From assembly GCF_016432865.1 (NCBI RefSeq), contig NC_067402.1, forward strand, positions 218,922,001 to 218,986,000: DNA of 64,000 nt. Reading direction: 5' to 3'. A program made the position numbers and the translations under genes. Under the pieces are notes generated by a model, which was not told where the DNA came from, did no database searches, and worked only from the letters and a program-made list of their open reading frames with translations. The stretch comes from Antechinus flavipes (lineage: Eukaryota). Below are positions 5,864-61,447 of this stretch, piece after piece. Position 1 is the stretch's first letter. Each line of letters begins with the position of its first letter.

Positions 5864-7588
5864 ATGTCCTGGGTAACATCATGAAGAACATCACAGCTAA
5901 GCGCTCACGGGCCCGGATAGTAGAGAAACTTCTGTCCTTGGGGCTAGTTGCAGAGCGGCGGGAGCTGTACAAGAAGCGCCGGAGGAAGCCTGCGACTGCC
6001 AGTCTTGTAAGCACATCTTGGTACTGCTTCCACTTGAGCCCTCTTCATTTCATTCTTGGCTATTCCCACATCTTCCAGTGAGGAGGGCAGGATCAGAAGG
6101 TCCGACTTAGTACTCTCAAGCTGCCTCTACTCCTTATGTTCTAGCCCAACTTATGCCTGCTTCCTTCCAGCTGGATGGAAAGGATCCTCTGAAGGACTCT
6201 GACCAGGAGGATCCGGAGGAAGAAGAAGAGGAGGATCAATTGCTGGAGGAGGATAGTGAGGAGGATGAAGAAGGCCCAGGGGCTGAAGCAGCTCAAGGCA
6301 CCCCAGGCCACATATCCCAAAGCCTTAGGCAGATCCTGCAAGACGAAGGTGAGGAGACCAGGAGCAAGGGTTTGGGGTTAGAGAGACTGGGGTGGAGGAC
6401 CCCCAGATCATCATTTTCCCTTTACCTCCTCAGACTTCTCTGCCCCTATCCAGTGGCTCCAGAACTGCCTGATTCGAATAGCTGAAGACCGGGAGGAAGA
6501 TGGTGAGTGGGAAAGGTTGGGGGATTTGAGGAGGAAGGGACTGAAGCCTTCCAGGAACATGATCAGGGACTAGAACAAAGAGGGGACAGGCTTTCTCCCT
6601 CATCTAGGTCTGTCCCTTCTGTTCCTAGGCTGCAGCCAGGCAGTGCCCTTGGTGCCTCTGACAGAGGAGAACGAAGATGCAATGGAGAATCGGGATTTCC
6701 AGAAGCTGTTGAGAAAGCTGGGGATTCGGCCTCCAGCCTCAGAACAGGTGAGCTTCATGGCCCATTGGAGGACCAGACTGGGGACTGGTGGTTTTCTTGT
6801 CCTCCCCATTGCAACTTTTGGCCTTGACTTCCCTGATCACTTAGGAATCTTTCTGGAGAGTTCCAGCCAAGTTGAGTCCTGCACTGCTGCGGAGGGCGGC
6901 AGCTTCTTTGAGTCAAACAGGGCCTGAGATACAGTCTGCAGACTGCCCAGAGCAGGGGCCCAGGAAGGAGAAGCCTGCACAAGCCCCAGGATCCCCTGTG
7001 ACGGCCAAAAAACGGAAGATTGCTCTAGAATCAACAGGTAACAGGTCTGGGAGTAGGGGACTGGCTGGGGGCACTAAAGCAGCAGGCAGAGCCTCATCCT
7101 TACTGGTGCTCCTCATTGGGTCATTTCAGAGGGAAAAACTGAGGAGGAGCCATCGAGTTCTGAGTCCCAGAAGCTACAACTACTAGACAGTGATGAGGAG
7201 CAGAAGGATGAAAATGAAAACAAAGGTTGGGTGGAGAGGGTCTGTGTGTGTCTGTCTAGGCATAATATTTTCCTCTTATTCTTATTTTTAATTACACTGT
7301 GTCTGTGCTTTGGGATAATACCTTCCTTCTGTTTTCCTTCTCTATGACTGTGTGTGTGTTTGTGTGTCTAAGTGTAAAATACCTCTCTCTTGTTCTCTTT
7401 CTCCATTACCCTATGCATGTGTGTCTGTATGTAATAGCCTCCCTCCTATTCTTCCTCTTTGTCACCATCCTCAATTATCCTGACCATTTTCCTTCTCTTC
7501 AAATCTCATAGATACTGATCCAGACTCCCCTGAGCCCCCAAGGAGCCACAAGAGGAGAAGGTTTCTGATTGAGGATGAAGATGACTAA
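5864..7588 (+). CDS. TIMELESS: Protein timeless homolog, 3' part (last 7 coding exons; the gene starts upstream of the window)
   Basis: Exons 5864-6006, 6171-6348, 6434-6502, 6629-6747, 6845-7037, 7130-7225, 7512-7588 (TAA). All introns GT-AG with continuous phase. Peptides [88 protein letters not shown] and FLIEDEDD* match the human TIMELESS C-terminus. AATAAA at 7854-7859. Confidence 0.96.
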
Positions 7589-8456
7589 GAAGCTGCTTTG
7601 ATGTGACATGGGAGGGTGTCCCAGCACTGGTTCCCACAGCTACCTTCCAGGAGCAGCTCCGAATTGCTGGGGCAGACTGGCAAAGGGGACAGTGGGTGTG
7701 TCCTTTGTTCCAGTTTCCTAGGGTAACAGGCTCTGCCCTTTTCTTGTCCTTGGTTATCTGCCTTGGCCCAGCTTTGGAACTTTGGGGTGGGAGTAAGAAG
7801 GGCAATTTATAGATACTTCTTGTTTTGTGCTTTATTATAAAATTAAAGCATTAAATAAAAACCTGCTTCTGTTGGCCTGAATCTCAACACCTTTTACTCT
7901 TTGTCCAGGCTTCCACATATATCTTAGTTGAAGTGACAGTGACACTGTCAGGGTCTTTCTGTTCCATGCATACCCAGCTCTCAGGGAGTCCAGGGACCCT
8001 GAATCCAATGAAGCTCACCATGACTGTTGGCAGGAGGGGGAATGATGTTACAGGACACAGTGACAGAGAAAGAGAAAAGGCATTTGTCACTATAGCAACA
8101 AGGGCAAAGGTCCAAGTCCAGCCTGCAGAGAAGGAACTAAGCCATATCTTTTTTGACCTCTTGAACCATCTGCTTCCCACAATCTACTGACTTTAGCTTT
8201 TGTAGGAGCTAGGAGCACAGAAAAATAGGCAGTTAGACCTAAGAGAGTCATTTCTCAAGCTTTTTTTTTTTTTTTTCTCCAGAGACAGGCTTTTCTCATA
8301 AATCCTCAGGGATGATACAATGAGTGGAACAAGTCTCAGGTGCAAGTCCCAGGAGAGATGGGATAAGAACAGAGCCTAACTATGACCTGGCAAAATTTTA
8401 TCTTGCCATTTCCTTATCTGACCCTACTTGACTCCCTACCTTTTATTTTTCTTCAG

Positions 8457-9118
8457 CAGGACTGCCTCAACCACCATCCTTCTGGCCCAGATTCAGCTTT
8501 GTTTTGCTATATCTTACTATATCAACTGATTATCACTACAATGAAAGCCATAATAGAGACTCTCACCTCTCCTCCTGTCTCTTTCCAATAATATGCTGGT
8601 GACATTCTCTAGCCAACCCCAATCCCCAAAGTAGGATCTCCTATTTGAATTTCCCAATTTGGATCCTTGATCTGACACAAAGTGGCATGAGTTGTGACTA
8701 AGGAGGAGGTTTTTTTGTTGTTGTTTGCACCGTGGCTTGAATTTTTTTGACTAAGAGGGAAGGAAACCATTGAGACTTTGGTCCTTGGATTCTAAGATGT
8801 TGGCCAGGCTTGATATGACCCTACTCTATAGCTCCTAGGCAAATTTCAATTGAACTAGGGAGTATTCATTGGTTACCTGTCCTTCCAGAGGACTCATGAA
8901 TCTGAGTAGATGATTTATCAAATCAAACTGCAGGCGTGTGAGTTTATCTTGTTTCAGTTCCCATAGATCCCAAAACCCATTTCTGGTCTTTTATCTTTCC
9001 ATCCTACCCAAGAGTTTTCATCTGAGGCTTGAAGTATCATATAATGTCTTAAAATTTCCTGAATTAAAGACTATGATAATGTGCCAAGCTGATCAAAAAG
9101 TCCTGGCCAAGCCTTCTC

Positions 9119-9120
<2 letters not shown>
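8457..9120 (+). pseudogene. APON: Decayed apolipoprotein F-family paralogue, probably apolipoprotein N (APON), with multiple stops and at least one frameshift
   Basis: The acceptor region ccttttatttttcttcag|caggactgc resembles the APOF exon-2 acceptor cctttatattcttctctag|caaggctgc. One frame gives ALFCYILLYQL (signal-peptide-like; APOF here has MLLCGFLLYPV), then LRGKETIETLV (8751-8783; APOF RLGGVKATETLL), then L*LLGK (8826-8843; APOF LQLLGR). After a frameshift comes LEVSYNVLKFPELKTMIMCQADQ (9028-9096), resembling mouse ApoN LEKVYTQLAKSPELKNFTLSVEDQ as recalled from memory. The position matches mouse Timeless-Apon-Apof. Confidence 0.7.

Positions 9121-9168
<48 letters not shown>
9121..9168. 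repeat. (AC)24 microsatellite
   Basis: Direct reading. Confidence 0.98.
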
Positions 9169-9171
<3 letters not shown>

Positions 9172-9954
9172 CCCTACATTCCCTCTAAGACTTGCAGCTG
9201 ACAGCCTTGGTGAAGAATACAGTCCGTTTATTTTCTTAGATGAAATACAGACTATGAAACAAATAACCCGATGAGGATGAGGAAGCAGAAGCTCTAAATA
9301 ATTTGTAAATTTTTTTTTAATTTTTTAATGAATTTAATTAACTAAAATTAAAAACTAAAAATTAAGTTAACTAAAAATAAAAAATCAACTAAAATTAAAG
9401 GATCTAAGAAGCTCTAGAATGGGGAAAGAAATATCCTGGATTCATTGACAACTTATAGTAAATACAGGCTGTTGATTTAAGACCTCATACCTAACCAATT
9501 CTGTTTTGTCATTTTTCCCCTTAATTTCCAGACCCTTCTTTTGCCTAGGGCCTCATTCACTCATTAAGCAAATATTGAGCATATACTGAGTATTTAGTAT
9601 CTTTACTAGTATCTTCTAGTGCTTTATAATTAGATGGAGGAGACTTTAGGTCCTTAAAAATTATATTGCACTAGAGATTACAAATATAACACCAGTGATT
9701 GTTTGACTGAGGACCAGCCTAGAAACATTTGGAGAGTCTCAAACCAATCTTTTATCTTTCATAATGTCCATTTCATAGACTTCTCTGAACCTGACCAGGA
9801 ATGTTGGGATGTGGGTGGCAAATGAATAGCAAGGAAGAGGAACTGTTAAGTAAAACACTTTTTTCTAATTCAGAAGCCATAACAGTAGTTTGTCTTTATA
9901 CTTAACTTTATACATATTCCTTTTGATCCTCATTGAAAATAACAAACATAAGAA

Positions 9955-10260
9955 TTATTATAACTACCATGCACCAGGCACTATGCTAAGGATTTTACAA
10001 ATATCCCATTTGAAAATATTATCTCGCTTGATCTTCCCAGCTAGGTAATTGCTCTCATTATTCCCATTTTACAGTTGAAGAAAGCAAAGGTTAAATGACT
10101 TGCCCAGAGTCACACAGCTGTCTGAAGCTGGATTTGAACTGTGGTCTCCCCAACTTCAGTGCTGTCTCCAGGGCACCATCTTGGTATTGTTCCCAATATA
10201 CTGATGAAGAAACAGGTTCATGGCAGTTAAATAAATTGTTAAATATCACTGAGTTCAGAA
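9955..10260 (-). mobile_element. MIR/CORE-SINE fragments
   Basis: cccattttacagttgaagaaagc...aaatgacttgcccagagtcacacagct...ggatttgaact is the MIR core in reverse orientation. Confidence 0.7.
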
Positions 10261-10319
10261 AAGAATAAGACTTGGACTCCAAACCTCTGGCTGCATATCT
10301 AGTTCTGTTCACTTGCCTA

Positions 10320-10490
10320 CAACACAAAGGGACAAGGTCTGACATGGTGCAAGATAGACAAATATTTGCAGTGACCATTTCTCTTGCCAGTCTTTGGGAT
10401 AGGATAGGAAGAGCAGGGGTATGTGAAGTCCAGGATAGAAGAGTCATAAGACCTACAAAGGAGACCAACTGTCACTCTTGAGCAGGTAGG
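10320..10490 (+). promoter_or_regulatory. Putative APOF hepatic promoter and short non-coding exon 1
   Basis: DR1-like AGGGAC-A-AGGTCT at 10328-10340; FOXA-type palindrome CAAATATTTG at 10359-10368; donor CAG|GTAGGT after 10485, pairing with the acceptor at 10747. Confidence 0.45.
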
Positions 10491-10774
10491 TTTCCTTTTG
10501 TCTCTTGTGCCAGGAGAAACGATTCTTTAGCTTTCCATAGTCAAAGACAAAGATGAGACCAGGAGAAATGGTAGGGGAGCGTAAATTTTTGAATAACTAG
10601 TCCAAAATTTTCAGCCTTGGCCATTAATAGCAAGTTATAGAGGTGGAGGTTGTACTATGGATCAAATTGTCCCCCATCTGAATCTGAATACTTTGTGACT
10701 TTAGCCAGAAAAGAATAGCTTTGTGTCTCCTTTATATTCTTCTCTAGCAAGGCTGCAGTCCACTACTCTCCAAA

Positions 10775-11671
10775 ATGTCTGTATTGATGCTTCTGTGTGG
10801 CTTCCTGCTATACCCAGTAACTGCAGCTGGATCCCAGCCAAAGACTCTACCTCCCGGGCCTCCGACCCTGGACCCCCAGGCGCCCATTGTCAACCCCCTT
10901 TCCTGTTGGGACTTGTTGCCTGAATCTCTTCCCGATTTCAACCACCTAGCCCCTCTGCCTAGGTACCTGATTAGCCTGGCACTGTACATACCCCTGGAGC
11001 AAGCTGGCTGTCCAACCGATGCCCATAACCTTCGGCAGCAGCTCAATAGGTTGGGGGGGGTGAAAGCCACAGAGACCCTCCTCCAACAGCTCCAAGGCCT
11101 GCCAAGGGACAAAAAAGACAAGAAGTCTGACTGGGTCCTGTTCTCCATTCTGCAGCTCCTGGGCAGGAGAACGGAGAGGTTGGGAAGGTCAGGGAGGATC
11201 ATCCGCTCACTCTCCGCCACAGATTGTGTCTCTGAGAAGGAACAGCGAGTGCACAGTATCATCCAGTTCTTGCCACAAGTGGGAAGTTACTATAACCTTG
11301 GTACAGCTTTCTATTACGCTGCCCTGAATTGCACAGCTCAGGCCTGGGAGCGAGGACAGGAAGCGGGACTGGACCTAGGCTATGATTTCCTTGTGGGACT
11401 GATGGGAGTAGTGGGGGGCCCTGTAGGGATAGTGGCTGGTGTAGTACTTAGACCAGTGGTCAAATCTGAGGCGCGGAAGCTGATCGAATATTATTACAGA
11501 AATAAGGAGATGGGAAGCACAGATCAAAGCTGGCAGGAGTGGGGAATCACCCCAGAAACCGGCGGCCGCTGGAAGGAAGACTATGGGGTGAGCAGCGGCA
11601 AACACGTGGCTGACGAAGTGACAGAAGCCACCTCCCTGTGGAACTGGAGGTCATTCAAGATCTGGGGATAG
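10775..11671 (+). CDS. APOF: Apolipoprotein F precursor, 298 aa, encoded in one exon
   Basis: Signal peptide MSVLMLLCGFLLYPVTA; propeptide with PLSC...LAPLPRYLISLAL...AGC...LGG; convertase-type site RIIR|SLSATDC; mature region EKEQRVHSIIQFLPQVGSYYNLGTAFYYA...ERGQEAGLDLGYD matches human APOF. Syntenic between TIMELESS and STAT2. AATAAA at 11802-11807. Confidence 0.93.
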   Translation: MSVLMLLCGFLLYPVTAAGSQPKTLPPGPPTLDPQAPIVNPLSCWDLLPESLPDFNHLAPLPRYLISLALYIPLEQAGCPTDAHNLRQQLNRLGGVKATETLLQQLQGLPRDKKDKKSDWVLFSILQLLGRRTERLGRSGRIIRSLSATDCVSEKEQRVHSIIQFLPQVGSYYNLGTAFYYAALNCTAQAWERGQEAGLDLGYDFLVGLMGVVGGPVGIVAGVVLRPVVKSEARKLIEYYYRNKEMGSTDQSWQEWGITPETGGRWKEDYGVSSGKHVADEVTEATSLWNWRSFKIWG

Positions 11672-23831: not shown

Positions 23832-33367
<9,536 letters not shown>

Positions 33368-41899: not shown

Positions 41900-43160
41900 C
41901 CGAGATGAAGCGACTTGCCCACTAAAGTCAGTTTAGAATTCCTAAAATCACATCCGAGGTTCTTCCTCGTCCACGCTCGTACCCAGATCTAATTCCCAAC
42001 CATAGGGGCATTCCTTGCACTCTCGTTTCCCACGGGCGGAACTAAGCCTGTACTGTGCTCGCGTCTTTTCCTAGGACCGAGAAGTCCGTGGCGGTACCCC
42101 GTTGTCTTCCTTCCCCCCTTCCTTCTCTGCTCCGCTCGTCTCAGCAGGGACAACTCGAAAGCAACAACTGCTGCCCCGGCCGAGAAGTGCGCTTCCGGCC
42201 CAGCCTGATTGGCTCGAGCCCCCAAACGCCACTCGTTGATTGGCCCTGATCGGCTCCGAAAGTTTCTAGAGTTAGGCAGGTCAAGAGGCATTGAGAAGAT
42301 TTGGGATTTCCCGCGGAGACATTTTCCTTGAACTGGCTTTTTCCCTGCCTTAATCTGATCTCGTCCCCTCGACCGGAAGCATCCGTCACTCGAGACTTGG
42401 GGACAACAGTCAGCGCGTCAAGGGTCTCGGGAACCCACGCAGCTCCCGGGATCCTGACGCTCCACCCTCTCCCCTCCCCCACCCCCGGCGCATTCTGGGT
42501 AACCGCTCCTACGTATTCTCCAGTGGTTTCTCGGGAGCTAATCATTTGCCCCCACCCACTCCTTTCCCAGAGAATTATGGGTATGGCTTTTCCTATCCCC
42601 GCCCCTTCCTGTTTTCCCGCCCAGAGGGTTCTGGGTAACAAGTAGGCCTCAGACTGTGGGAAAATTTTATATCCCTTGTCCCCCTTTCTCCCAAAGGATT
42701 CTGGGTAGCTTTTCCTCCCACTTCCACCCCCTTCCGCCCCCCACCTTTCCCACGTCCTCCCCCCTACCCCAGGTGCATCAGGGCTAAGCCAGGCAGGTAA
42801 GGGGGGGGATGGTGTGGGCGGTAAGGAAAGACAGTGTGTGGGGAAGAGGTCCAGGGAAGAAATGGGACGGTAGGAGGTGAGGGTCTGTAGAGAGAGGGTG
42901 GAAAACCCCCTTGGTAATGGAGGTTGCTTGATTTCCCGGGTTAGCCGACTCGGGTCCCCAGGAAAGCCCGCAGTGGGGCTCTGGCTAGGCATCCGCGGCT
43001 GGGCCCGCCTCCCCCTCCCATCCGGGCCACGCACTCCTCCTCCACTCCCCCAGCAGACCAGGATGTCCCCTCAGGGGCTACCCTACTAAAGGTGGGAGCA
43101 GGCCAGTAGAAGGGGTCGGGGCGGGAGGGTGGGGGTACCTTGCCTGCTTCGACTGTCGTC
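41900..43160 (+). promoter_or_regulatory. PAN2 CpG-island promoter and 5'UTR region
   Basis: CpG-rich; two ATTGG (reverse CCAAT) boxes 31 bp apart (42208, 42239); ETS CCGGAAG motifs; GGGATTTCCC at 42303-42312; several ZNF143-like TACCCA(G/T)AA motifs on the minus strand; exon-2 acceptor cccccag|cag at 43053/43056. Confidence 0.75.
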
Positions 43161-46100
43161 ATGAACTTTGAGGGCCTGGATCCTGGACTGACGGAGTATG
43201 CCCCAGCCCTGCATCCCACCCTGGACCCCGTCCTAGATGCCCACCTGAACCCTAGTCTGCTGCAGAATGTGGAGCTGGACCCCGAGGGAGTGGCCCTGGA
43301 GGCACTGTCGGTCCCGGAGTCCGTGCACATCATGGAGGGCGTCTACTCGGAGCTGCACAGCGTGGTGGCCGAGGTGGGCGTGCCTGTGTCCGTGTCCCAC
43401 TTCGACCTCCACGAGGAGATGCTGTGGGTGGGGAGTCATGGGGTAAGAGACTTTTGCTTGGAGGGGCGACGGGGAAGTTGTCTGTCTGGTATGAGGGCCA
43501 AGGACCTTGCAGAAAGCTGCCCGCGATTGGTGTAGGGGTAGAGTGGGTACTGGTGCTGGTGAACCGGGAAGGGGACAGTTTGGAAGTGATTTGGTGTCCT
43601 TCTCCCCGGGGCGATTTAATGTCTGCAAGGTTCTACCCCAAGTTCTGGTCAGATTCCCCAATCAACTCCACCAATTGTTTTACAGCTATTTAAATCTTAT
43701 TTATTTTTCCTTCTCACATATGTACTTAGGCCGACATAGTATTTTTATACCTGTTTTGGTTGTCCAGTCATGTATGAGTCTTTGTGATTCTATTTGGAGT
43801 TTTCTTGGCAAAGTTATTGGAATGGTTTACCATTTCCTTCTCCAGCTTATTTTACAGATGAGGTAACAGTCCTACAGCTAGGAAATGTCCCAGACCAGAT
43901 ATGAATTCAAGTATTTCTGACTCCAGGCCTGGTGCTCTATCCACTGTGCCTCTTAGCTAGCTTTTATTCAAATGTCTGTTATGTATGTGTCATTTTTATT
44001 ATTTTGAATTCTAATGTGTCAGAGATCAGGTACTTTGTGTTCTGTGAGTAGGGATCTTAACTAACTACTTGAAACTCCCTGAGTTCCTATCACAGTGTTC
44101 TCCATATCTTTAGTGGTTAGTAAATAGTGCATTTTTTATGTATCTTGAGTGCCCAACATACTACCATATTACTCTTAGAGCTCAGTAAAGAATGTGTTAT
44201 TTCTTATATATGAAAATAACATTCCCAGGACACCACTGGAGCTTTGGAGGTTGCTTTTTCAAAAATATATTTCTGCTGATCTGTCCATTCTCTTGCCCAA
44301 TCCCCCTATGACTGATAAAAAATTTCCAAGATGGGAGTTTCAGGGGTTGGAACAAAAACTAACCGATGTTGGATGAAATCCATGATTTAAGTCTCCTTGT
44401 CCCTTTTTAAACCAATTTACATAGTTTTCTAGAGATAATAAATGCTGGTAGACTCATTGATTAGGACGTGGACTTGTGTACCCCAGTTGCCAATAAGTTT
44501 ATAGAATTCAAAAGAAAGATCCTTAAGAGATCCCCTAATACAATCATCTTATTTTAATGATGAAACAGACCCAGAGAAGTTAGGTGATTTTTGCCGAAGG
44601 TCACAGCCAATAAATGGTAGAATTGGAATCAGGTCTTCTGATTTTCTAATTCAGAGCTCTTTTTTACATAAATAATGTGCTGTTTGCTTCAAATCATAAC
44701 AAAACCAATTAAGTTTTTCTTTAAACTTTTTTTGAAAAATTAACTTCTTCAGTTGTTTATCTTCATTCACCCCATTGTATATTTTCCTATTATAGTCACA
44801 GTAAATACGTACTAATCTTTTTCTGCTTTTTTACTTAACAGTATTTTCAAATGTCTTCTATATTTATTGTTTTCGTGTGATATTAATTTAGTTTATTTGA
44901 TTTAATGTGATTTTAAAAATTACATTAACATTTCAGTTTGTTCCTCTATTCCCTAATCTTTGGATTTCAGTTTTTGTTCTTGGTTTGTTTGTCTTTTTTG
45001 CAATAAATTACATTGTCATAAATACCTTTGAGCAAATAGATTTTTGAAATTTTTTTTTAGGCCATACTACCAATAATAGATTATTAGATAAAAGGATGTT
45101 TGCATTTTTCTAACTCTGGCAGTAGCTTGTTATGATTTAATCCTTCCCTCCATCCCATATGTAAGATATTACATATACACAAAGAACCCTAATTCTAGAT
45201 CTGGCATTACCCAAAAGTGGTTGGTTTCAATGATGAAAACCTCCAAAATCCCTTTTTTCTCACTTCCTATCATTCCATCTCTTTCCTACACTTTACTTTT
45301 GTAAGCCTGTTCTGTCTACTCATCAATTTATTCCTTTCTTAATACTTTCCCAACCTCTTACCTTGATTTGTCTTCACTTTCCTCCCTTCCCATTAATAAA
45401 CCTATAGTAACCAGTTTAACCTATCCCCTCCTTGACAATTCCTTGATCCCTACTCTTGTTAGTACTTACACCTTGCCAAAAGTCACTTTTGGATAACTAC
45501 CACCATCCATCTCCTTTGTTCCTCTTCAAGATTTGGAAGAAATCATAATTCTGAATTGATACTAGATCATTACAGATCAGGTACTCTCTTATCTCAAAAA
45601 ATAACCTTTTTGCTCAATCTCCACAGAGACTGTCTAAACCTCTCCTTTTCTCAAACTTCACTCTTGGCAAAGAGTCTCATTTCATATTTTTATGGTGGGG
45701 GAAGAGAGAAGCAGACAGGGAGACAGTTCTTCTCTACATCTCAAAACCCTTGGACATCCCCAATATTTATTCTTTATTCCAGTCTCTGATTAAGAAGTGG
45801 TTTTCAAGGCCAACATCTCTACATCTATCCTTGATCCACCCTTCCTATTTTCTCTAATAGGTTGCCTTTGTAATCCCTTTCTCCCTACCTCCCTCATCCC
45901 CCTACCCCCGATTTAATAATTATTATCTATTGGTTTCTTCCCTTATTGCCTAAAACGTGCCTGCCTTTCCCATCTTGGGAAAAAACCACCACCACTACAA
46001 AACATTAGACTCTACAACTGGAGATCTCTCCCCTCCACAGCCAGACTGATTTCTCAATCCTTTGCTATAAATATCCTCTGATTTCCGAACTAATTTAATG

Positions 46101-56779: not shown

Positions 56780-57760
56780 GGGGCAGCGGGCAGCGTAACA
56801 GCGAATTCTTGCCTTCACTTATTTGCATCGGATTCTAGTGTAATTTAACATTCGGGAGTGGAAGTGGGGATTCCGGGGGTGGGGAGCTAGGCGGAGCGAG
56901 CATCTGTTCCTGCTCGTTAAGGACCCACCCCTCTCACTAGAGGAAGGGAAAATGTACAGGAAACTGAATGCCAGATGGCGGGAGCTGCCGGGAGTTGCAA
57001 AGCTGCTCGGGAATTGTAGTTCTAACTTGGCGATTGCACCTAGGACCCTCTCTTCACCTGTCCCTGCTTCTCCGTGCTCGGGCCTCGGCCTCGCCACTCC
57101 CACTCGCCCGCCCTTTGGGCCACGCCTCCGTCTGGGCTGCCGCCTTCCCTTGCCACGCAGGTCCTGCCAGCGGGCGTCGGGGTCCTAAACACTACCATTG
57201 CCGCGAGAACCGTCGAGCTTGGACTGCGAGCCGCACGGCTGCGGCGTCTGTGTTCCCCGGGAGGCTGGGCCCCGCCGGGAGGGCGAACGGGCCACGAGGG
57301 CGAACGGGCCGCGAGGGTGCAGGCGCGGAGTCCTACGACCCCGGCAGTGCGCGGCGCCTAAGACCTCCGGAATAACCCAATCTGCCGCGCTCGGTTCCTA
57401 GGTACGAGCTGCTAAGCTGACGTGGGGGTGACCGGAATTGAGGATAAGCGGGCCGGGCCGAGTCGTGGGGATGCTGGGAGGCGAGCGCAGGCGAGGGGGG
57501 CCCTTGCTCATCCTCGGTCGCTTCTCTCTCCGCAGGCAAACGGAGCTGCGCCGGCCCTGCGCGGATCATGGCGGGCTGCGGGGGGCTGGCCCTGCTCCTG
57601 GCCGCCCTGCTGGGCAGTGCGTGGGCGCGGAGGAGCCAGGACCTGCATTGTGGAGGTAAAGGTCAGGGCGGAGGTGGGGAAGGAGGTCAGGGGCCCTAGG
57701 AGCTTTATTTGCAGCCCAACCTTTTCGGGGGGTCCCGGAGGTTCTCTGCAATTCCGGAGA
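56780..57760 (+). promoter_or_regulatory. CNPY2 CpG-island promoter, probably with a short non-coding first exon
   Basis: CpG-rich; GGGAATTGTAGT (ACTACAATTCCC, ZNF143/THAP11 motif) at 57009-57020; TGACGTGG at 57418-57425; candidate donor CTAG|GTACGA after 57401 and acceptor ctctccgcag| at 57535. Confidence 0.7.
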
Positions 57761-60700
57761 AGCCTGTGGACCCCCTCCTCAAATCATATTTTTTCTTTAA
57801 AAAATTTTTTTTAACATTTTTATTTAAAGTTTTAAATTCCAAGTTCTAGACCTAATCTCTCCCCCCACCCACTCCCACACACACTATCACCACCACCAGG
57901 GTAAGCAATCAGATATAGATTGTACATGTGCAATTGTGTAAAAAAAAAAAAAATCCGCATTAGTCATTTTGTACGAGAAGACTCGAATAAAAGAAAAGAA
58001 AGTGAAAAAAATGTCATGCTTCAGTCTATATTCCATCAATATCAGTTCTTTGGAGGCAGAGAGTATGCTTCATCATTAGTCCTTTGGGATTGTTTTAGAT
58101 TACTGTGTTGCTCAGAATAGCTAAGACATTCACAGTTCTTCATCACACAATATTCTTGTTGCTGTATACAATGTTCTTCTGGTTCTGCTGACTTCACTGT
58201 GCATCAGTTCATGTAAGTCTTTACAGGCATTTCTGATATCATACTGCTTATCATTTCTTTTACCACAGTGATTTTCCATTACAGTCATATACCACAGCTT
58301 GTTTAGCCACTCCCCAATTGGTGGGGGATTTTGATTTTTAATTTTCAATTCTTAGACACCACAAAAAAAAACTGCTATTATTTTATATTTATTGCATATG
58401 TTTGTTTCATATATATATAAACAAATAGGTCCTTTTCTCTTTTTCTGGATGTCTTTGGGATATGAACCTAGCAAGCAGTGGTTTTACTGGATAAAGGGTA
58501 TGCAATTTTATACTCTTTGGGCATAGTTCAAATTTCTCTGCAAAATGTTGGATCAGTTTTTCCAGCATCCAACATTTTCCTTTTTTGTCTTATTAGCTAC
58601 TCTGAAAGTTGTCTTAATTTGCATTTCTCTGATCAATAATGATTTAGAGTATTTTTCATTTGATTATAAAGCTTATTTCTTCTTTTGAAAATTACCTATT
58701 CATATCCTTTGATTTATCAATGGGGAATGATTTATATTTTTATAAATTTGATTCAGTTCTCTGTGTATTTGAAAAATGAGGCCTTTATCAGAGATACTTT
58801 TGCAAACATTTTGCTTTCCTTATAATTTTAGTGTATTAGTTTTGTTTGTGCACAAACTTTAATTTTATATGATCAAATTATCTATTTTTCATTTTGTAAT
58901 GCTCTCTTATCTAATCTGGTCCTAAATTCTTCTCTTATCTATAAATCTGAGAGAGAAAATCATTTCATCCTCTCACAATTTGCTTATGTTATCACCCTTT
59001 ATGTGTAAGCCATGTATCCATTTTGATTTTATCTTGGCAAATGGCCAAGATGGTGAGATGGTGGTCTATATCTACTTTTCTGCCATACAGTTTTTCAGTT
59101 TTCCCAACAGTTTTTTTTTTAATCAAATAATGAGTTTTTGTTCCAAAAGCTTAGAATTTGGTGTTTATTATATGCTAGATTACTATGGTCATTTACTGGA
59201 ATGTAATTGTACAATCTATTCCACTCTATTTCTTAGCCAGTACCAGATTGTTTTGATAATCATCTCTTTATAACACAGCATGAGAAATGGTATGGTTAGA
59301 CCATCTTCTTTCACTTTTTTTCATCGATTGCCTTGATATCTGTGAGCCTTTGTTCGTCCAGATAAATTTTGTTATTATTTTTTCCTAGTTCTGTAAAATA
59401 ATTTTTTGATAATTTGATTGGTATGGCACTAATTGTCATTTTTATCATATTGGCTCAGCCTACCCATTAGCAATTAGTATTTTTCCAATTGTTTAGATCT
59501 AATTTTATTTGTATGAAAAGTTTTATAGTTGTGTTTGTACAGTTAAGCTTTTTTTAATATATAGAATTACATAAGAAAATAATCAATGAAATACAGCTAT
59601 CTAAATTTTTTTTTATCCAACTTCAAGAACCTCTTGTACTCATGTACTCTTTGGGAGTCTGTGAATCCCAGGTTAAAAATCATTGATTTAAATAATCTCT
59701 AAGGTTGCCAATCCTTTATGCTCCTCTGTTCCTCTAATTTCAGCTTGCAGGGCTCTTGTGGATGAACTGGAGTGGGAAATTGCCCAGGTAGATCCCAAGA
59801 AGACCATCCAGATGGGTTCCTTTCGTATTAACCCTGATGGCAGCCAGTCATTTGTGGAGGTAATTTATACTTTGTCTATAATTGAATAGCTTCATTGACT
59901 CTGGGCAGAGCCTGAAGATTTATTCTGGCAGAAGAGGGCTTTGATCTCATTAGGAGTGAATGAAACATTATTGGGGGGGGGGGGAATAAGAAAGAGTTGG
60001 CTATACCTAATAAGGGAGAAGATGGAGTTGGGGGTTTTGACTGCCATGTGTCTTTGTTACAAGCAGATAATCAGCTTCTATTCTGAGAACAGTATATTAT
60101 AAATACACTAGGAGATTAAAAAGGTGCTATCTTATAGTTGGGAAGTTTATAATCTTATTGGAGGAACTAATCAAGTCAGTGGCTGAAAGCACTGAAGATA
60201 ACCTAAGCTATATGTATACATTCTTATATTTGTAAAGCAACATACACTTTGAAATGATTTTATATAATCAAAATATCTCAGATTCTATGTAAGTCTTTGC
60301 CTTGGCAAAAAGGTGCTTGATAAATGTTTGCTGAATTATTTCCACTGTTAGAGCAATAAACAAAAAATACACATTATGTAAACTGGGTCTCAGTACTTAG
60401 GGCATATAGGTAACAATAGTTAATCAGGAAGGCTTTCTGGAGAACATTAATTTTAAATTAAGTTCAGAAGAAAAGGAAGGATGTGAGTTTGGGAAAATAA
60501 CCTCTGTGAATGCACAGAGAGGGGAGGGATTGAGCCTGGCAAAGGATTTTTATGTATTGCTCTCCTAGGTGCCCTATGCCCGCTCAGAAGCACACTTGAC
60601 TGAACTGCTGGAACGGGTTTGTGAACAAATGAAGGAATATGGGGAACAGGCTAACCCTACCACTCATCGAAAGAATTATGTACGCGTAGTGAACCGGGAC

Positions 60701-61447
60701 AAGCAAGTTAGTGAGCTGGACACGGAGGGCATTCGAATTGATGGAGACATCAGAGCCAGCCTCAAGTTTGCGGTGAGGGCAAACAAGCACTGGGAAGTGG
60801 GGTTTCAGGTGTTCTGGGTTGTCTTTATTGCTTTAGTTTCTCTTTTGGAGGTGGGGGCAGAGGCCTCCCCGCAAGCATTCCTCACTTTGACTTGTCCTTT
60901 GGACTTATAGTGTGAGAGCATCGTAGAAGAATATGAGGATGAGCTTATTGAGTTCTTTTCCCGAGAGACTGACAATGTTAAAGACCGACTCTGTAGCAAA
61001 CGTACTGGTGAGTTTTCCCTGTTTTCACCTCACCACATTCTTGACTGTAGCTTAAGAGTTTTTCCTTCCTTGGAGACCTGAACTTCACAATTGCCTCGCT
61101 ATCCTTCAGCTCCACTGTCCACGGCAGTCAGCTCTTATTTGCTTCCCCCAAGTCTCAGTGGCATGTTCCCATCTGGAATAAAGAGATTGGGAGTAGGAGC
61201 AGCGAGGTGGCGCAGTGGATAGAGCACCAGCCCTGAAGTCAGGAGGGCCTGAATTCAGATCTGACCTTGGATACATAACACGTCCTAGCTGTGTGACCCT
61301 GGGCAGGTCACTTAACCCTAACTGCCTCAGGGGGAAAAAAAGAGAGAGAGATTTGGGAGTAGGAATGGTAAGAAGTTTTGGGGGGGATTTAATACTCCAA
61401 AGAATAGTTGGGAAGTGTGTATGCCAGCTTGATGCTAGAATTATTCT

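What the first reader, a model, noticed from the sequence alone, without database searches (positions are those of the whole stretch)
8457..9120. Hidden, heavily decayed APOF paralogue (probable APON pseudogene) between TIMELESS and APOF
Seen in the sequence: an APOF-like splice acceptor followed by collinear, same-frame peptide remnants of the neighbouring APOF: ALFCYILLYQL, ETLTSPP, LRGKETIETLV and L*LLGK (TAG where APOF has CAG). The spacing from the signal-peptide Cys to the LxG motif is 82 codons, against 85 in APOF. The distal part diverges from APOF but fits rodent ApoN as I recall it (IYQIKLQACEF vs VYETAEALAEF; LEVSYNVLKFPELK-7aa-DQ vs LEKVYTQLAKSPELK-7aa-DQ). Mouse has Apon at this position and human has a pseudogene. 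Inference: the APOF/APON duplication predates the marsupial-eutherian split, and APON was lost independently in this lineage. The ORF track shows only two short, unrecognised fragments of it (8382-8591 and 8938-9201).
Basis: partly seen in the sequence, partly recalled or inferred. Interest (0 to 1): 0.85.

Follow-up and report, generated by a model that had tools for sequence, protein, structure and literature searches.

The report
Decayed APON pseudogene in a marsupial
Between TIMELESS and APOF in the marsupial Antechinus flavipes lies the broken remnant of apolipoprotein N (APON), a gene found here only in placental mammals, so the APOF/APON duplication most likely predates the marsupial-placental split.

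Summary
The window is Antechinus flavipes. TIMELESS is upstream on the + strand and the APOF coding exon is at 10775-11671.

The stretch is nevertheless a real gene relic, and it matches eutherian APON:
- A DNA profile of six eutherian APON exons aligns collinearly to 8454-9112(+), at 55.6% identity over 646 nt.
- That alignment scores 75.8. The maximum over 502 other windows is 34.3, over 250 shuffles 29.8, and over block-permuted profiles 25.4.
- nhmmer with a low-entropy profile gives E 1.3e-5; the next hit has E 0.065. APOF profiles give no hit.
- A DNA tree groups marsupial with rodent APOF (100/99), apart from the relic plus APON.

The relic is not coding:
- ATC stands where APON has ATG.
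- Five stops lie in the reference frame.
- About 16 indels shift the frame.
- The 3' end is lost next to an (AC)n run.

No marsupial APON protein turned up, and no gene is called in this interval in three other marsupials.

Verdict: an unprocessed APON pseudogene at the syntenic site. It is a new member of a known kind and of moderate interest.

The parts
8441..8456 (+). Pyrimidine tract plus AG. This is the remnant of the splice acceptor of the APON coding exon.
   Evidence: Read directly. The profile alignment begins at 8454, which is profile position 75, 25 nt before the ATG column. Eutherian genomic APON contigs L001, L002, L004 and L006 have an acceptor 15-25 nt before the ATG. Taken alone, this part is not statistically distinguishable from other acceptors.
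8454..9112 (+). APON-homologous relic. It covers the 5' UTR part of the coding exon, the signal peptide, the pro-region and most of the mature-peptide region, up to about codon 231 of 254.
   Evidence: DNA profile alignment: 646 aligned nt, 55.6% identical to the consensus, score 75.8. Null values: 502 genomic windows have mean 21.7, sd 3.8, max 34.3; 0 of 250 dinucleotide shuffles reach it; control profiles score 18-27. nhmmer gives E 1.3e-5 for 8454-8939. A frameshift-tolerant alignment to the ApoN protein profile ranks top of 400 windows, with shuffle p about 0.0025.
8476..8478 (+). The start-codon position reads ATC, preceded by CCACC as in eutherian APON.
8668..8941 (+). Five stops in the APON reference frame start at 8668, 8688, 8748, 8907 and 8939.
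   Evidence: (codons mapped through the DNA alignment). About 16 frame-shifting indels lie between 8507 and 9031. Their number and exact positions depend on the alignment.
9121..9168 (.). (AC)n microsatellite just after the point where homology ends. The last ~23 APON codons cannot be aligned.
   Evidence: the alignment ends at 9112 even when sequence up to 9300 is offered.
10775..11671 (+). Intact APOF coding exon, the downstream paralogue.
   Evidence: Pfam PF15148, E 6.2e-49. It is 100% identical to the Antechinus flavipes APOF isoforms.
6646..6756 (+). TIMELESS C-terminal (PAB domain) coding exon, the upstream neighbour.
   Evidence: Pfam PF05029, E 4.8e-15, on ORF 6643-6924. TIMELESS lies directly upstream of APOF, on the same strand, in Vombatus and Petaurus.

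Best explanation
8454-9112(+) is an unprocessed (unitary) pseudogene. It is the marsupial remnant of apolipoprotein N (APON), the tandem paralogue of APOF that eutherians carry between TIMELESS and APOF.

Shown here:
- The stretch keeps the outline of the single APON coding exon: an acceptor, a short 5' UTR, a Kozak-like CCACC, then signal peptide, pro-region and mature-peptide region in order.
- It cannot encode a protein. The start codon is lost, stops and frameshifts run throughout, and the 3' end is missing.

Inferred:
- It has no coding function and drifts neutrally.
- The APOF/APON duplication happened before the marsupial-eutherian split.
- APON was later lost on the marsupial side, probably long ago.
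For: 1. DNA homology to eutherian APON.
- The profile alignment scores 75.8, against a genomic-window maximum of 34.3 and a shuffle maximum of 29.8.
- Reversed, complemented and block-permuted profiles score 18-25.
- It holds without the best-matching sequence: 66.9 against a maximum of 36.0.
- nhmmer gives E 1.3e-5 and 2.1e-5 at two entropy settings; the next hit has E 0.065.

2. It is specific to APON.
- Single-sequence z-scores are 2.4 to 20.6 for six APON sequences, 0.4 for the local APOF and 1.9 for rodent APOF.
- APOF nhmmer profiles give no hit.
- The motif DLL-x3-P-x-L-x-P has ApoN spacing, not APOF spacing.

3. Independent protein-level support.
- hmmsearch picks three collinear weak pieces.
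- The frameshift-tolerant alignment has p about 0.0025.

4. Marks of true homology.
- Mismatches have a transition/transversion ratio of 0.90.
- Identity is 61.8% at columns conserved among the six APON sequences and 51.6% at variable columns.

5. Synteny and strand.
- The order is TIMELESS, relic, APOF, all on +.
- Mouse Apon lies 12 kb upstream of Apof (PMC3282742).
- Eutherian gene models fuse APON and APOF in that order (P0165 and P0019).

6. The DNA tree gives {Antechinus APOF + rodent APOF} against {relic + APON} at 100/99.

7. Lesions are listed.
Against: - Standard searches see nothing or almost nothing: tblastn, blastn, Pfam on the two ORF pieces and default nhmmer (E 0.16 for a 42-nt piece).
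- Detection needs low-stringency profile scoring. I tried several settings, and the unflattened profile ranks the region only 5th-6th of about 505 windows.
- The part specific to mature ApoN is borderline on its own, at rank 4 of about 505.
- All three cysteines invariant among the six aligned ApoN proteins are replaced or deleted.
- The protein tree leaves APON, eutherian APOF and marsupial APOF as an unresolved three-way split (AU p 0.105 for either resolution).
- With only three groups, the DNA tree does not by itself root the relic on the APON side.
- No other marsupial sequence could be fetched, and no repeat library was available.
Confidence: 0.87

Rival explanations
1. Chance resemblance: ordinary intergenic DNA whose translation happens to echo ApoN/ApoF motifs.
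For: - Every single piece is weak: hmmsearch domains score -4 to +1 bits, and tblastn HSPs have E 0.8-13, no better than elsewhere in the window.
- blastn is blank.
- Likeness to the local APOF is at chance level.
Against: - The collinear DNA alignment is about 14 sd above 502 real windows and above all shuffles and permuted profiles.
- nhmmer gives E 1.3e-5.
- Five of six single APON sequences give z of 3.7 or more.
- It is the top window of the whole 64 kb on both strands, so the choice of place is accounted for.
Confidence: 0.04
2. Relic of a separate, marsupial-side duplication of APOF, or of a third ancient paralogue. It would not be orthologous to eutherian APON, so it would say nothing about when APON arose.
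For: - The protein tree cannot place APON relative to the two APOF groups.
- In an unrooted three-group DNA tree the relic simply sits on the internal branch.
- The part specific to mature ApoN is only borderline on its own.
Against: - There is no detectable similarity to the local or the rodent APOF, while similarity to APON runs over about 650 nt.
- That similarity reaches into the region which, by the literature, has no likeness to mature ApoF (PMC3282742).
- Antechinus APOF groups with rodent APOF at 100/99, apart from the relic.
- The relic has ApoN-type spacing after the DLL motif.
- It sits at the same position and on the same strand as eutherian APON.
Confidence: 0.05
3. The stretch descends from APON but is not inert. 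It might survive as a non-coding exon of an APOF or read-through transcript, or as an APOF upstream regulatory element. That would help explain why it is still alignable.
For: - The acceptor-like site is intact.
- The relic lies 1.7-2.3 kb upstream of the APOF coding exon.
- Eutherian gene models join APON and APOF sequence.
- DNA that is neutral between marsupials and eutherians is usually hard to align (general knowledge).
Against: - 55.6% identity, a branch length of 0.82 and about 19 indels in 650 nt fit long neutral decay.
- Identity differs little among codon positions.
- No expression or conservation data were available.
Confidence: 0.08

Closest known systems
Eutherian APON / Apon (apolipoprotein N; bovine 'ovarian and testicular apolipoprotein N' P0121, mouse P0147)
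   Same: - Same chromosomal position and strand, between TIMELESS and APOF.
- Same exon outline: an acceptor about 20 nt before the start, with the CDS in one exon.
- Collinear DNA similarity from -25 to about CDS nt 694.
   Different: - The relic is not an open reading frame. It has ATC for ATG, five reference-frame stops, about 16 frameshifts and no 3' end.
- It is only about 47-54% identical to any single eutherian APON sequence.
Human APON pseudogene (APONP)
   Same: Also a unitary pseudogene of APON next to APOF. The literature reports a loss of function by frameshift (PMC3282742).
   Different: By that paper the human copy is disabled by one frameshift that brings in a stop. The marsupial relic is decayed throughout, which points to a much older and independent loss. 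No human sequence was examined here.
Neighbouring APOF (window 10775-11671)
   Same: Both belong to the Apolipo_F family. APOF and ApoN share the signal peptide and pro-region; the eutherian ApoN profile hits the APOF exon at E 5.7e-22.
   Different: The relic shows no similarity to this APOF above chance. APOF is intact and annotated, and the relic is neither.

Membership tests
APON (apolipoprotein N) locus, orthologue or relic | Significant sequence similarity to APON that is stronger than to APOF. | tested here: met
   nhmmer gives E 1.3e-5 with the APON profile and no hit with APOF profiles. The profile alignment scores 75.8 against a null maximum of 34.3. Single-sequence z-scores are 2.4-20.6 for APON and 0.4-1.9 for APOF.
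APON (apolipoprotein N) locus, orthologue or relic | Conserved synteny: between TIMELESS and APOF, same strand, upstream of APOF. | tested here: met
   A TIMELESS_C exon lies at 6646-6756(+), the relic at 8454-9112(+) and APOF at 10775-11671(+). The mouse arrangement is taken from PMC3282742. Fused eutherian gene models have APON before APOF.
APON (apolipoprotein N) locus, orthologue or relic | Gene structure: the whole CDS in one exon, with a splice acceptor 15-25 nt before the start codon. | tested here: met
   The acceptor is at 8441-8456 and the start-codon position at 8476-8478, 19 nt after the AG. The alignment runs without an intron-sized gap. The acceptor alone is not statistically distinctive.
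APON (apolipoprotein N) locus, orthologue or relic | An intact reading frame encoding a secreted proprotein of about 250 aa with conserved cysteines. | tested here: not met
   There is no ATG. The stretch has five reference-frame stops, about 16 frameshifting indels and a missing 3' end, and the conserved Cys positions are lost. It is therefore filed as a pseudogene, not a gene.
Pfam Apolipo_F (PF15148) | A score above the gathering threshold on the encoded protein. | tested here: not met
   The two open pieces (69 and 87 aa) give no Pfam hit at E <= 10. The shorter pieces are too short to submit. This is expected for a relic broken every 20-60 codons.
Unprocessed (unitary) pseudogene | It sits at the ancestral locus, keeps intron-exon features, has no poly(A) tail or retrocopy marks, and no intact copy exists elsewhere in the genome. 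| tested here: inconclusive
   Locus and acceptor are retained. The rest of the Antechinus genome could not be searched at DNA level.
Transposable-element-derived sequence | A match to a repeat family, or multiple copies. | tested here: inconclusive
   No second copy of 7200-10700 exists in the 64 kb window, apart from a short repeat at about 10090-10140. No repeat library was available.

The most novel reading that the evidence does not exclude
APON was a working gene in early marsupials and was lost only within some marsupial lineages. In that case intact or far less decayed, still unannotated APON copies would survive in other marsupials or in monotremes. That would give a natural series of independent APON losses (human, dasyurids and others) for a gene whose function is still poorly understood.
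Probability: 0.2. Interest if true: 0.55.

Novelty: new member of a known kind. Interest (0 to 1): 0.4.

Why it matters
ApoN is a little-studied HDL-associated protein.

Protein trees cannot say when ApoN split from ApoF. A relic at the syntenic site in a marsupial supplies that missing evidence. It puts the tandem duplication before the therian split and adds a second, independent loss of the gene.

The case also shows that very old unitary pseudogenes can be recovered with low-entropy DNA profiles when BLAST, Pfam and default HMM searches are blank.

The wider impact is modest. The relic is a dead gene of a known family.

Tried and rejected
Searches that found nothing or too little:
- tblastn of the local APOF against the window gave nothing in the interval.
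- blastn of the candidate against the APOF exon gave a best E of 0.34, over the acceptor and signal-peptide part.
- A first attempt at a blastn null distribution timed out.
- BLOSUM62 local alignment of the read-through frame to APOF scored below the null average.
- Six-frame hmmsearch with the marsupial-APOF HMM gave no signal. With the ApoN HMM it gave only E of about 10.
- Pfam on the two ORF pieces gave nothing.
- tblastn with 46 ApoN proteins gave collinear but individually insignificant HSPs.
- nhmmer on the acceptor/start junction alone was not significant.
- Plain blastn with six APON exons gave nothing.

Comparative data that could not be obtained:
Sarcophilus APOF is not on record, and the Monodelphis, Vombatus and Petaurus files were too large. 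Only gene tables came back, and they show no called gene between TIMELESS and APOF.
- The word-indexed protein search with marsupial APOF found only marsupial APOF.

Other checks:
- The protein tree and AU tests could not time the duplication.
- The idea that L001 or P0164 might be a non-eutherian APON was rejected. L001 is no closer to the relic than the others and nests among eutherian sequences. P0164 is nearest to a mole.
- The scan's earlier notes held nothing relevant.

Full report
**Source and setting**

The window comes from the dasyurid marsupial Antechinus flavipes. The 298-aa ORF at 10775-11671(+) is 100% identical, over the parts they share, to two APOF isoforms of that species, and it is a clear Apolipo_F protein (PF15148, E 6.2e-49). 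Upstream on the same strand, an ORF at 6643-6924 carries the TIMELESS C-terminal PAB domain (PF05029, E 4.8e-15). Gene tables for Monodelphis, Vombatus and Petaurus show an upstream gene followed directly by APOF on the same strand, with no called gene between them. In Vombatus and Petaurus that upstream gene carries TIMELESS domains. The DNA of those records could not be fetched.

**Checking the observation**

The pyrimidine tract plus AG at 8441-8456 and the two ORF fragments are there too.

The stated basis, likeness to the neighbouring APOF, does not exceed chance:
- tblastn with the local APOF finds nothing on the + strand of the interval.
- BLOSUM62 local alignment of the read-through frame scores below the average of 788 other windows.
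- A profile of ten marsupial APOFs gives about -1.2 bits, rank 135 or lower.
- A frameshift-tolerant alignment to that profile gives p 0.13-0.63.
- DNA comparison gives z 0.4 against the local APOF and 1.9 against a rodent APOF.
- nhmmer with APOF profiles gives no hit at E <= 10.
- The acceptor/start junction alone is also not distinctive.

**Getting real ApoN sequences**

A full HMMER scan with the marsupial APOF profile returned proteins of about 250 aa labelled 'apolipoprotein F-like'. A follow-up search with their alignment returned 60 proteins. Among them are bovine 'ovarian and testicular apolipoprotein N' (P0121) and mouse 'apolipoprotein N precursor' (P0147). Every named hit is eutherian, and all four eutherian superorders are represented. 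Unnamed ones are nearest to eutherian ApoN.

**Protein-level evidence against ApoN**

hmmsearch with a 46-sequence ApoN profile, run on six-frame translations, picked three weak pieces on its own. They correspond to the signal peptide, the GKDTTETLI motif and the SPE-K...DQ motif. They are collinear and lie in two frames, but the best E is only about 10.

I then wrote an alignment routine that places the protein profile on DNA and allows frameshifts and stops.
- With my first parameter set, window 8401-9300(+) was the top of 400 windows on both strands: 36.6 against mean 21.7, sd 3.7 and max 34.8.
- One of 500 dinucleotide shuffles reached that score, and a Gumbel fit gives p 0.0025.
- Two other parameter sets gave p 0.015 and 0.028.

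This is suggestive but not decisive. It reads LSNN...DLL-x3-P-x-L-x-P, with ApoN spacing rather than APOF spacing.

**DNA-level evidence, which decides the matter**

Six eutherian APON exons with flanks were obtained from short public contigs (L001-L006). By protein similarity five are from Glires and one is unplaced.

*Default nhmmer.* The second-best hit in the whole window, after the APOF exon, was 8751-8792(+) at the collinear position, with E 0.16.

*My own profile-to-DNA alignment.* This routine is local, has affine gaps, and scores each window against its own base composition.
- The unflattened profile ranked the region only 5th-6th of about 505 windows.
- With the profile flattened to allow for deep divergence (0.6 profile + 0.4 background), 8401-9120(+) scored 75.8. 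The 502 other windows had mean 21.7, sd 3.8 and max 34.3, and the three best windows all overlap the candidate.
- None of 250 dinucleotide shuffles exceeded 29.8.
- Controls behaved as they should: reversed profile 18.5, complemented profile 17.8, reverse-complemented candidate 27.0, and profile with 30-column blocks permuted mean 20.1 and max 25.4.
- Leaving out the best-matching sequence still gives 66.9 against a maximum of 36.0.
- The pro-region half alone gives 49.8 against a maximum of 34.3. The half specific to mature ApoN is borderline on its own, at rank 4 of about 505.

*A standard tool agrees.* nhmmer with the same alignment, built at lower relative entropy (hmmbuild --ere 0.3 and 0.2), reports 8454-8939(+) at E 1.3e-5 and 2.1e-5. 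The next hits are at E 0.065-0.1. I tried five entropy settings in all. A single squirrel-like APON sequence gives E 0.001.

*Marks of true homology.* Mismatches show a transition/transversion ratio of 0.90. Identity is 61.8% at columns conserved among the six APON sequences and 51.6% at variable columns.

**Anatomy**

The alignment runs from 8454 to 9112, which corresponds to 25 nt before the start codon up to about CDS nt 694 of 765. It has 646 aligned nt, 55.6% identical to the consensus, with 13 inserted and 73 deleted nt.
- The AG of the acceptor is at 8455-8456.
- After CCACC, the start-codon position (8476-8478) reads ATC.
- Five stops lie in the reference frame, starting at 8668, 8688, 8748, 8907 and 8939.
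- About 16 indels shift the frame. Their number depends on the alignment.
- Homology stops at 9112, just before an (AC)n run at 9121-9168. The last ~23 codons are not recognisable.
- The three cysteines invariant among the six aligned ApoN proteins are gone.
- No second copy of the region exists in the window.

**APON, not APOF**

Single-sequence comparisons give z-scores of 7.5, 8.0, 11.6, 3.7, 2.4 and 20.6 for the six APON sequences, and 0.4 and 1.9 for the two APOF sequences. In a DNA tree on an unguided MAFFT alignment, Antechinus APOF joins rodent APOF (100/99), apart from the relic plus APON. The relic sits outside the eutherian APON group (90/94) on a branch of 0.82 substitutions per site. 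The relic is therefore not a recent duplicate of the marsupial APOF.

**Timing of the duplication**

A protein tree leaves APON, eutherian APOF and marsupial APOF as a three-way split. The best tree pairs APON with marsupial APOF at 92/81. AU tests reject neither a eutherian-only duplication nor one before the split (p 0.105 and 0.106). The relic supplies the missing evidence: an APON-type sequence at the syntenic site in a marsupial implies the duplication came before the therian split.

When the marsupial copy died is not determined. Three things fit an old loss, possibly before the marsupial radiation, but this is inference only: the long branch, the many indels, and the absence of gene models in three other marsupials.

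**Comparison with what is known**

The literature places mouse Apon 12 kb upstream of Apof. It describes ApoN as similar to ApoF only in the pro-region, and reports the human gene as a pseudogene through a frameshift (PMC3282742). Two literature searches turned up nothing on APON in marsupials. A vertebrate apolipoprotein survey that came up covers other family members (PMC6854765). Some eutherian gene models fuse APON and APOF in that order (P0165 and P0019), which confirms the tandem, same-strand layout.

**Verdict**

The feature is a real, very decayed, unprocessed APON pseudogene. It is a new member of a known kind and of moderate interest.

Main caveats:
- Detection depends on low-stringency profile scoring.
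- The APON profile is built mostly from Glires.
- No repeat library and no other marsupial DNA could be used.

Noticed in passing
window 9121-9168: An (AC)n microsatellite of about 24 units lies directly after the point where APON homology ends. It may mark the event that removed the 3' end of the relic.
   Followed up: partly
window 9280-9400: AT-rich low-complexity stretch made of repeated 'aattaa/aaaat'-like units, downstream of the relic.
   Followed up: no
window 10089-10140: A short interspersed repeat has copies at 30040-30098(+) and 61287-61317(-), at 76-90% identity. It is the only repeat detected between TIMELESS and APOF by comparing the window with itself.
   Followed up: no
window 10775-11671: The two annotated Antechinus APOF isoforms (213 and 205 aa, P0003 and P0008) both skip parts of the single coding exon, including parts of the conserved C-terminal domain. 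The uninterrupted 298-aa ORF matches other marsupial APOFs end to end. The full-length form may therefore be missing from that annotation.
   Followed up: partly
proteins P0165 (Carlito), P0019 (Smutsia), P0111 (Camelus ferus): Public eutherian gene models look faulty. Two fuse an APON N-terminal part to APOF, and one holds an internal duplication of an ApoN segment. They are probably read-through or assembly artefacts.
   Followed up: no
locus L001 (Logan SRR31578275), gene 681-1445: An intact ApoN of 254 aa is at most 55% identical to any named ApoN. Its species is unknown. Its exon starts with the same 11 bases after the acceptor as the marsupial relic.
   Followed up: partly
window 42400-43200 and 56800-57800: GC-rich stretches give the highest background scores in several composition-sensitive scans. 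They may be CpG islands or exons of neighbouring genes.
   Followed up: no
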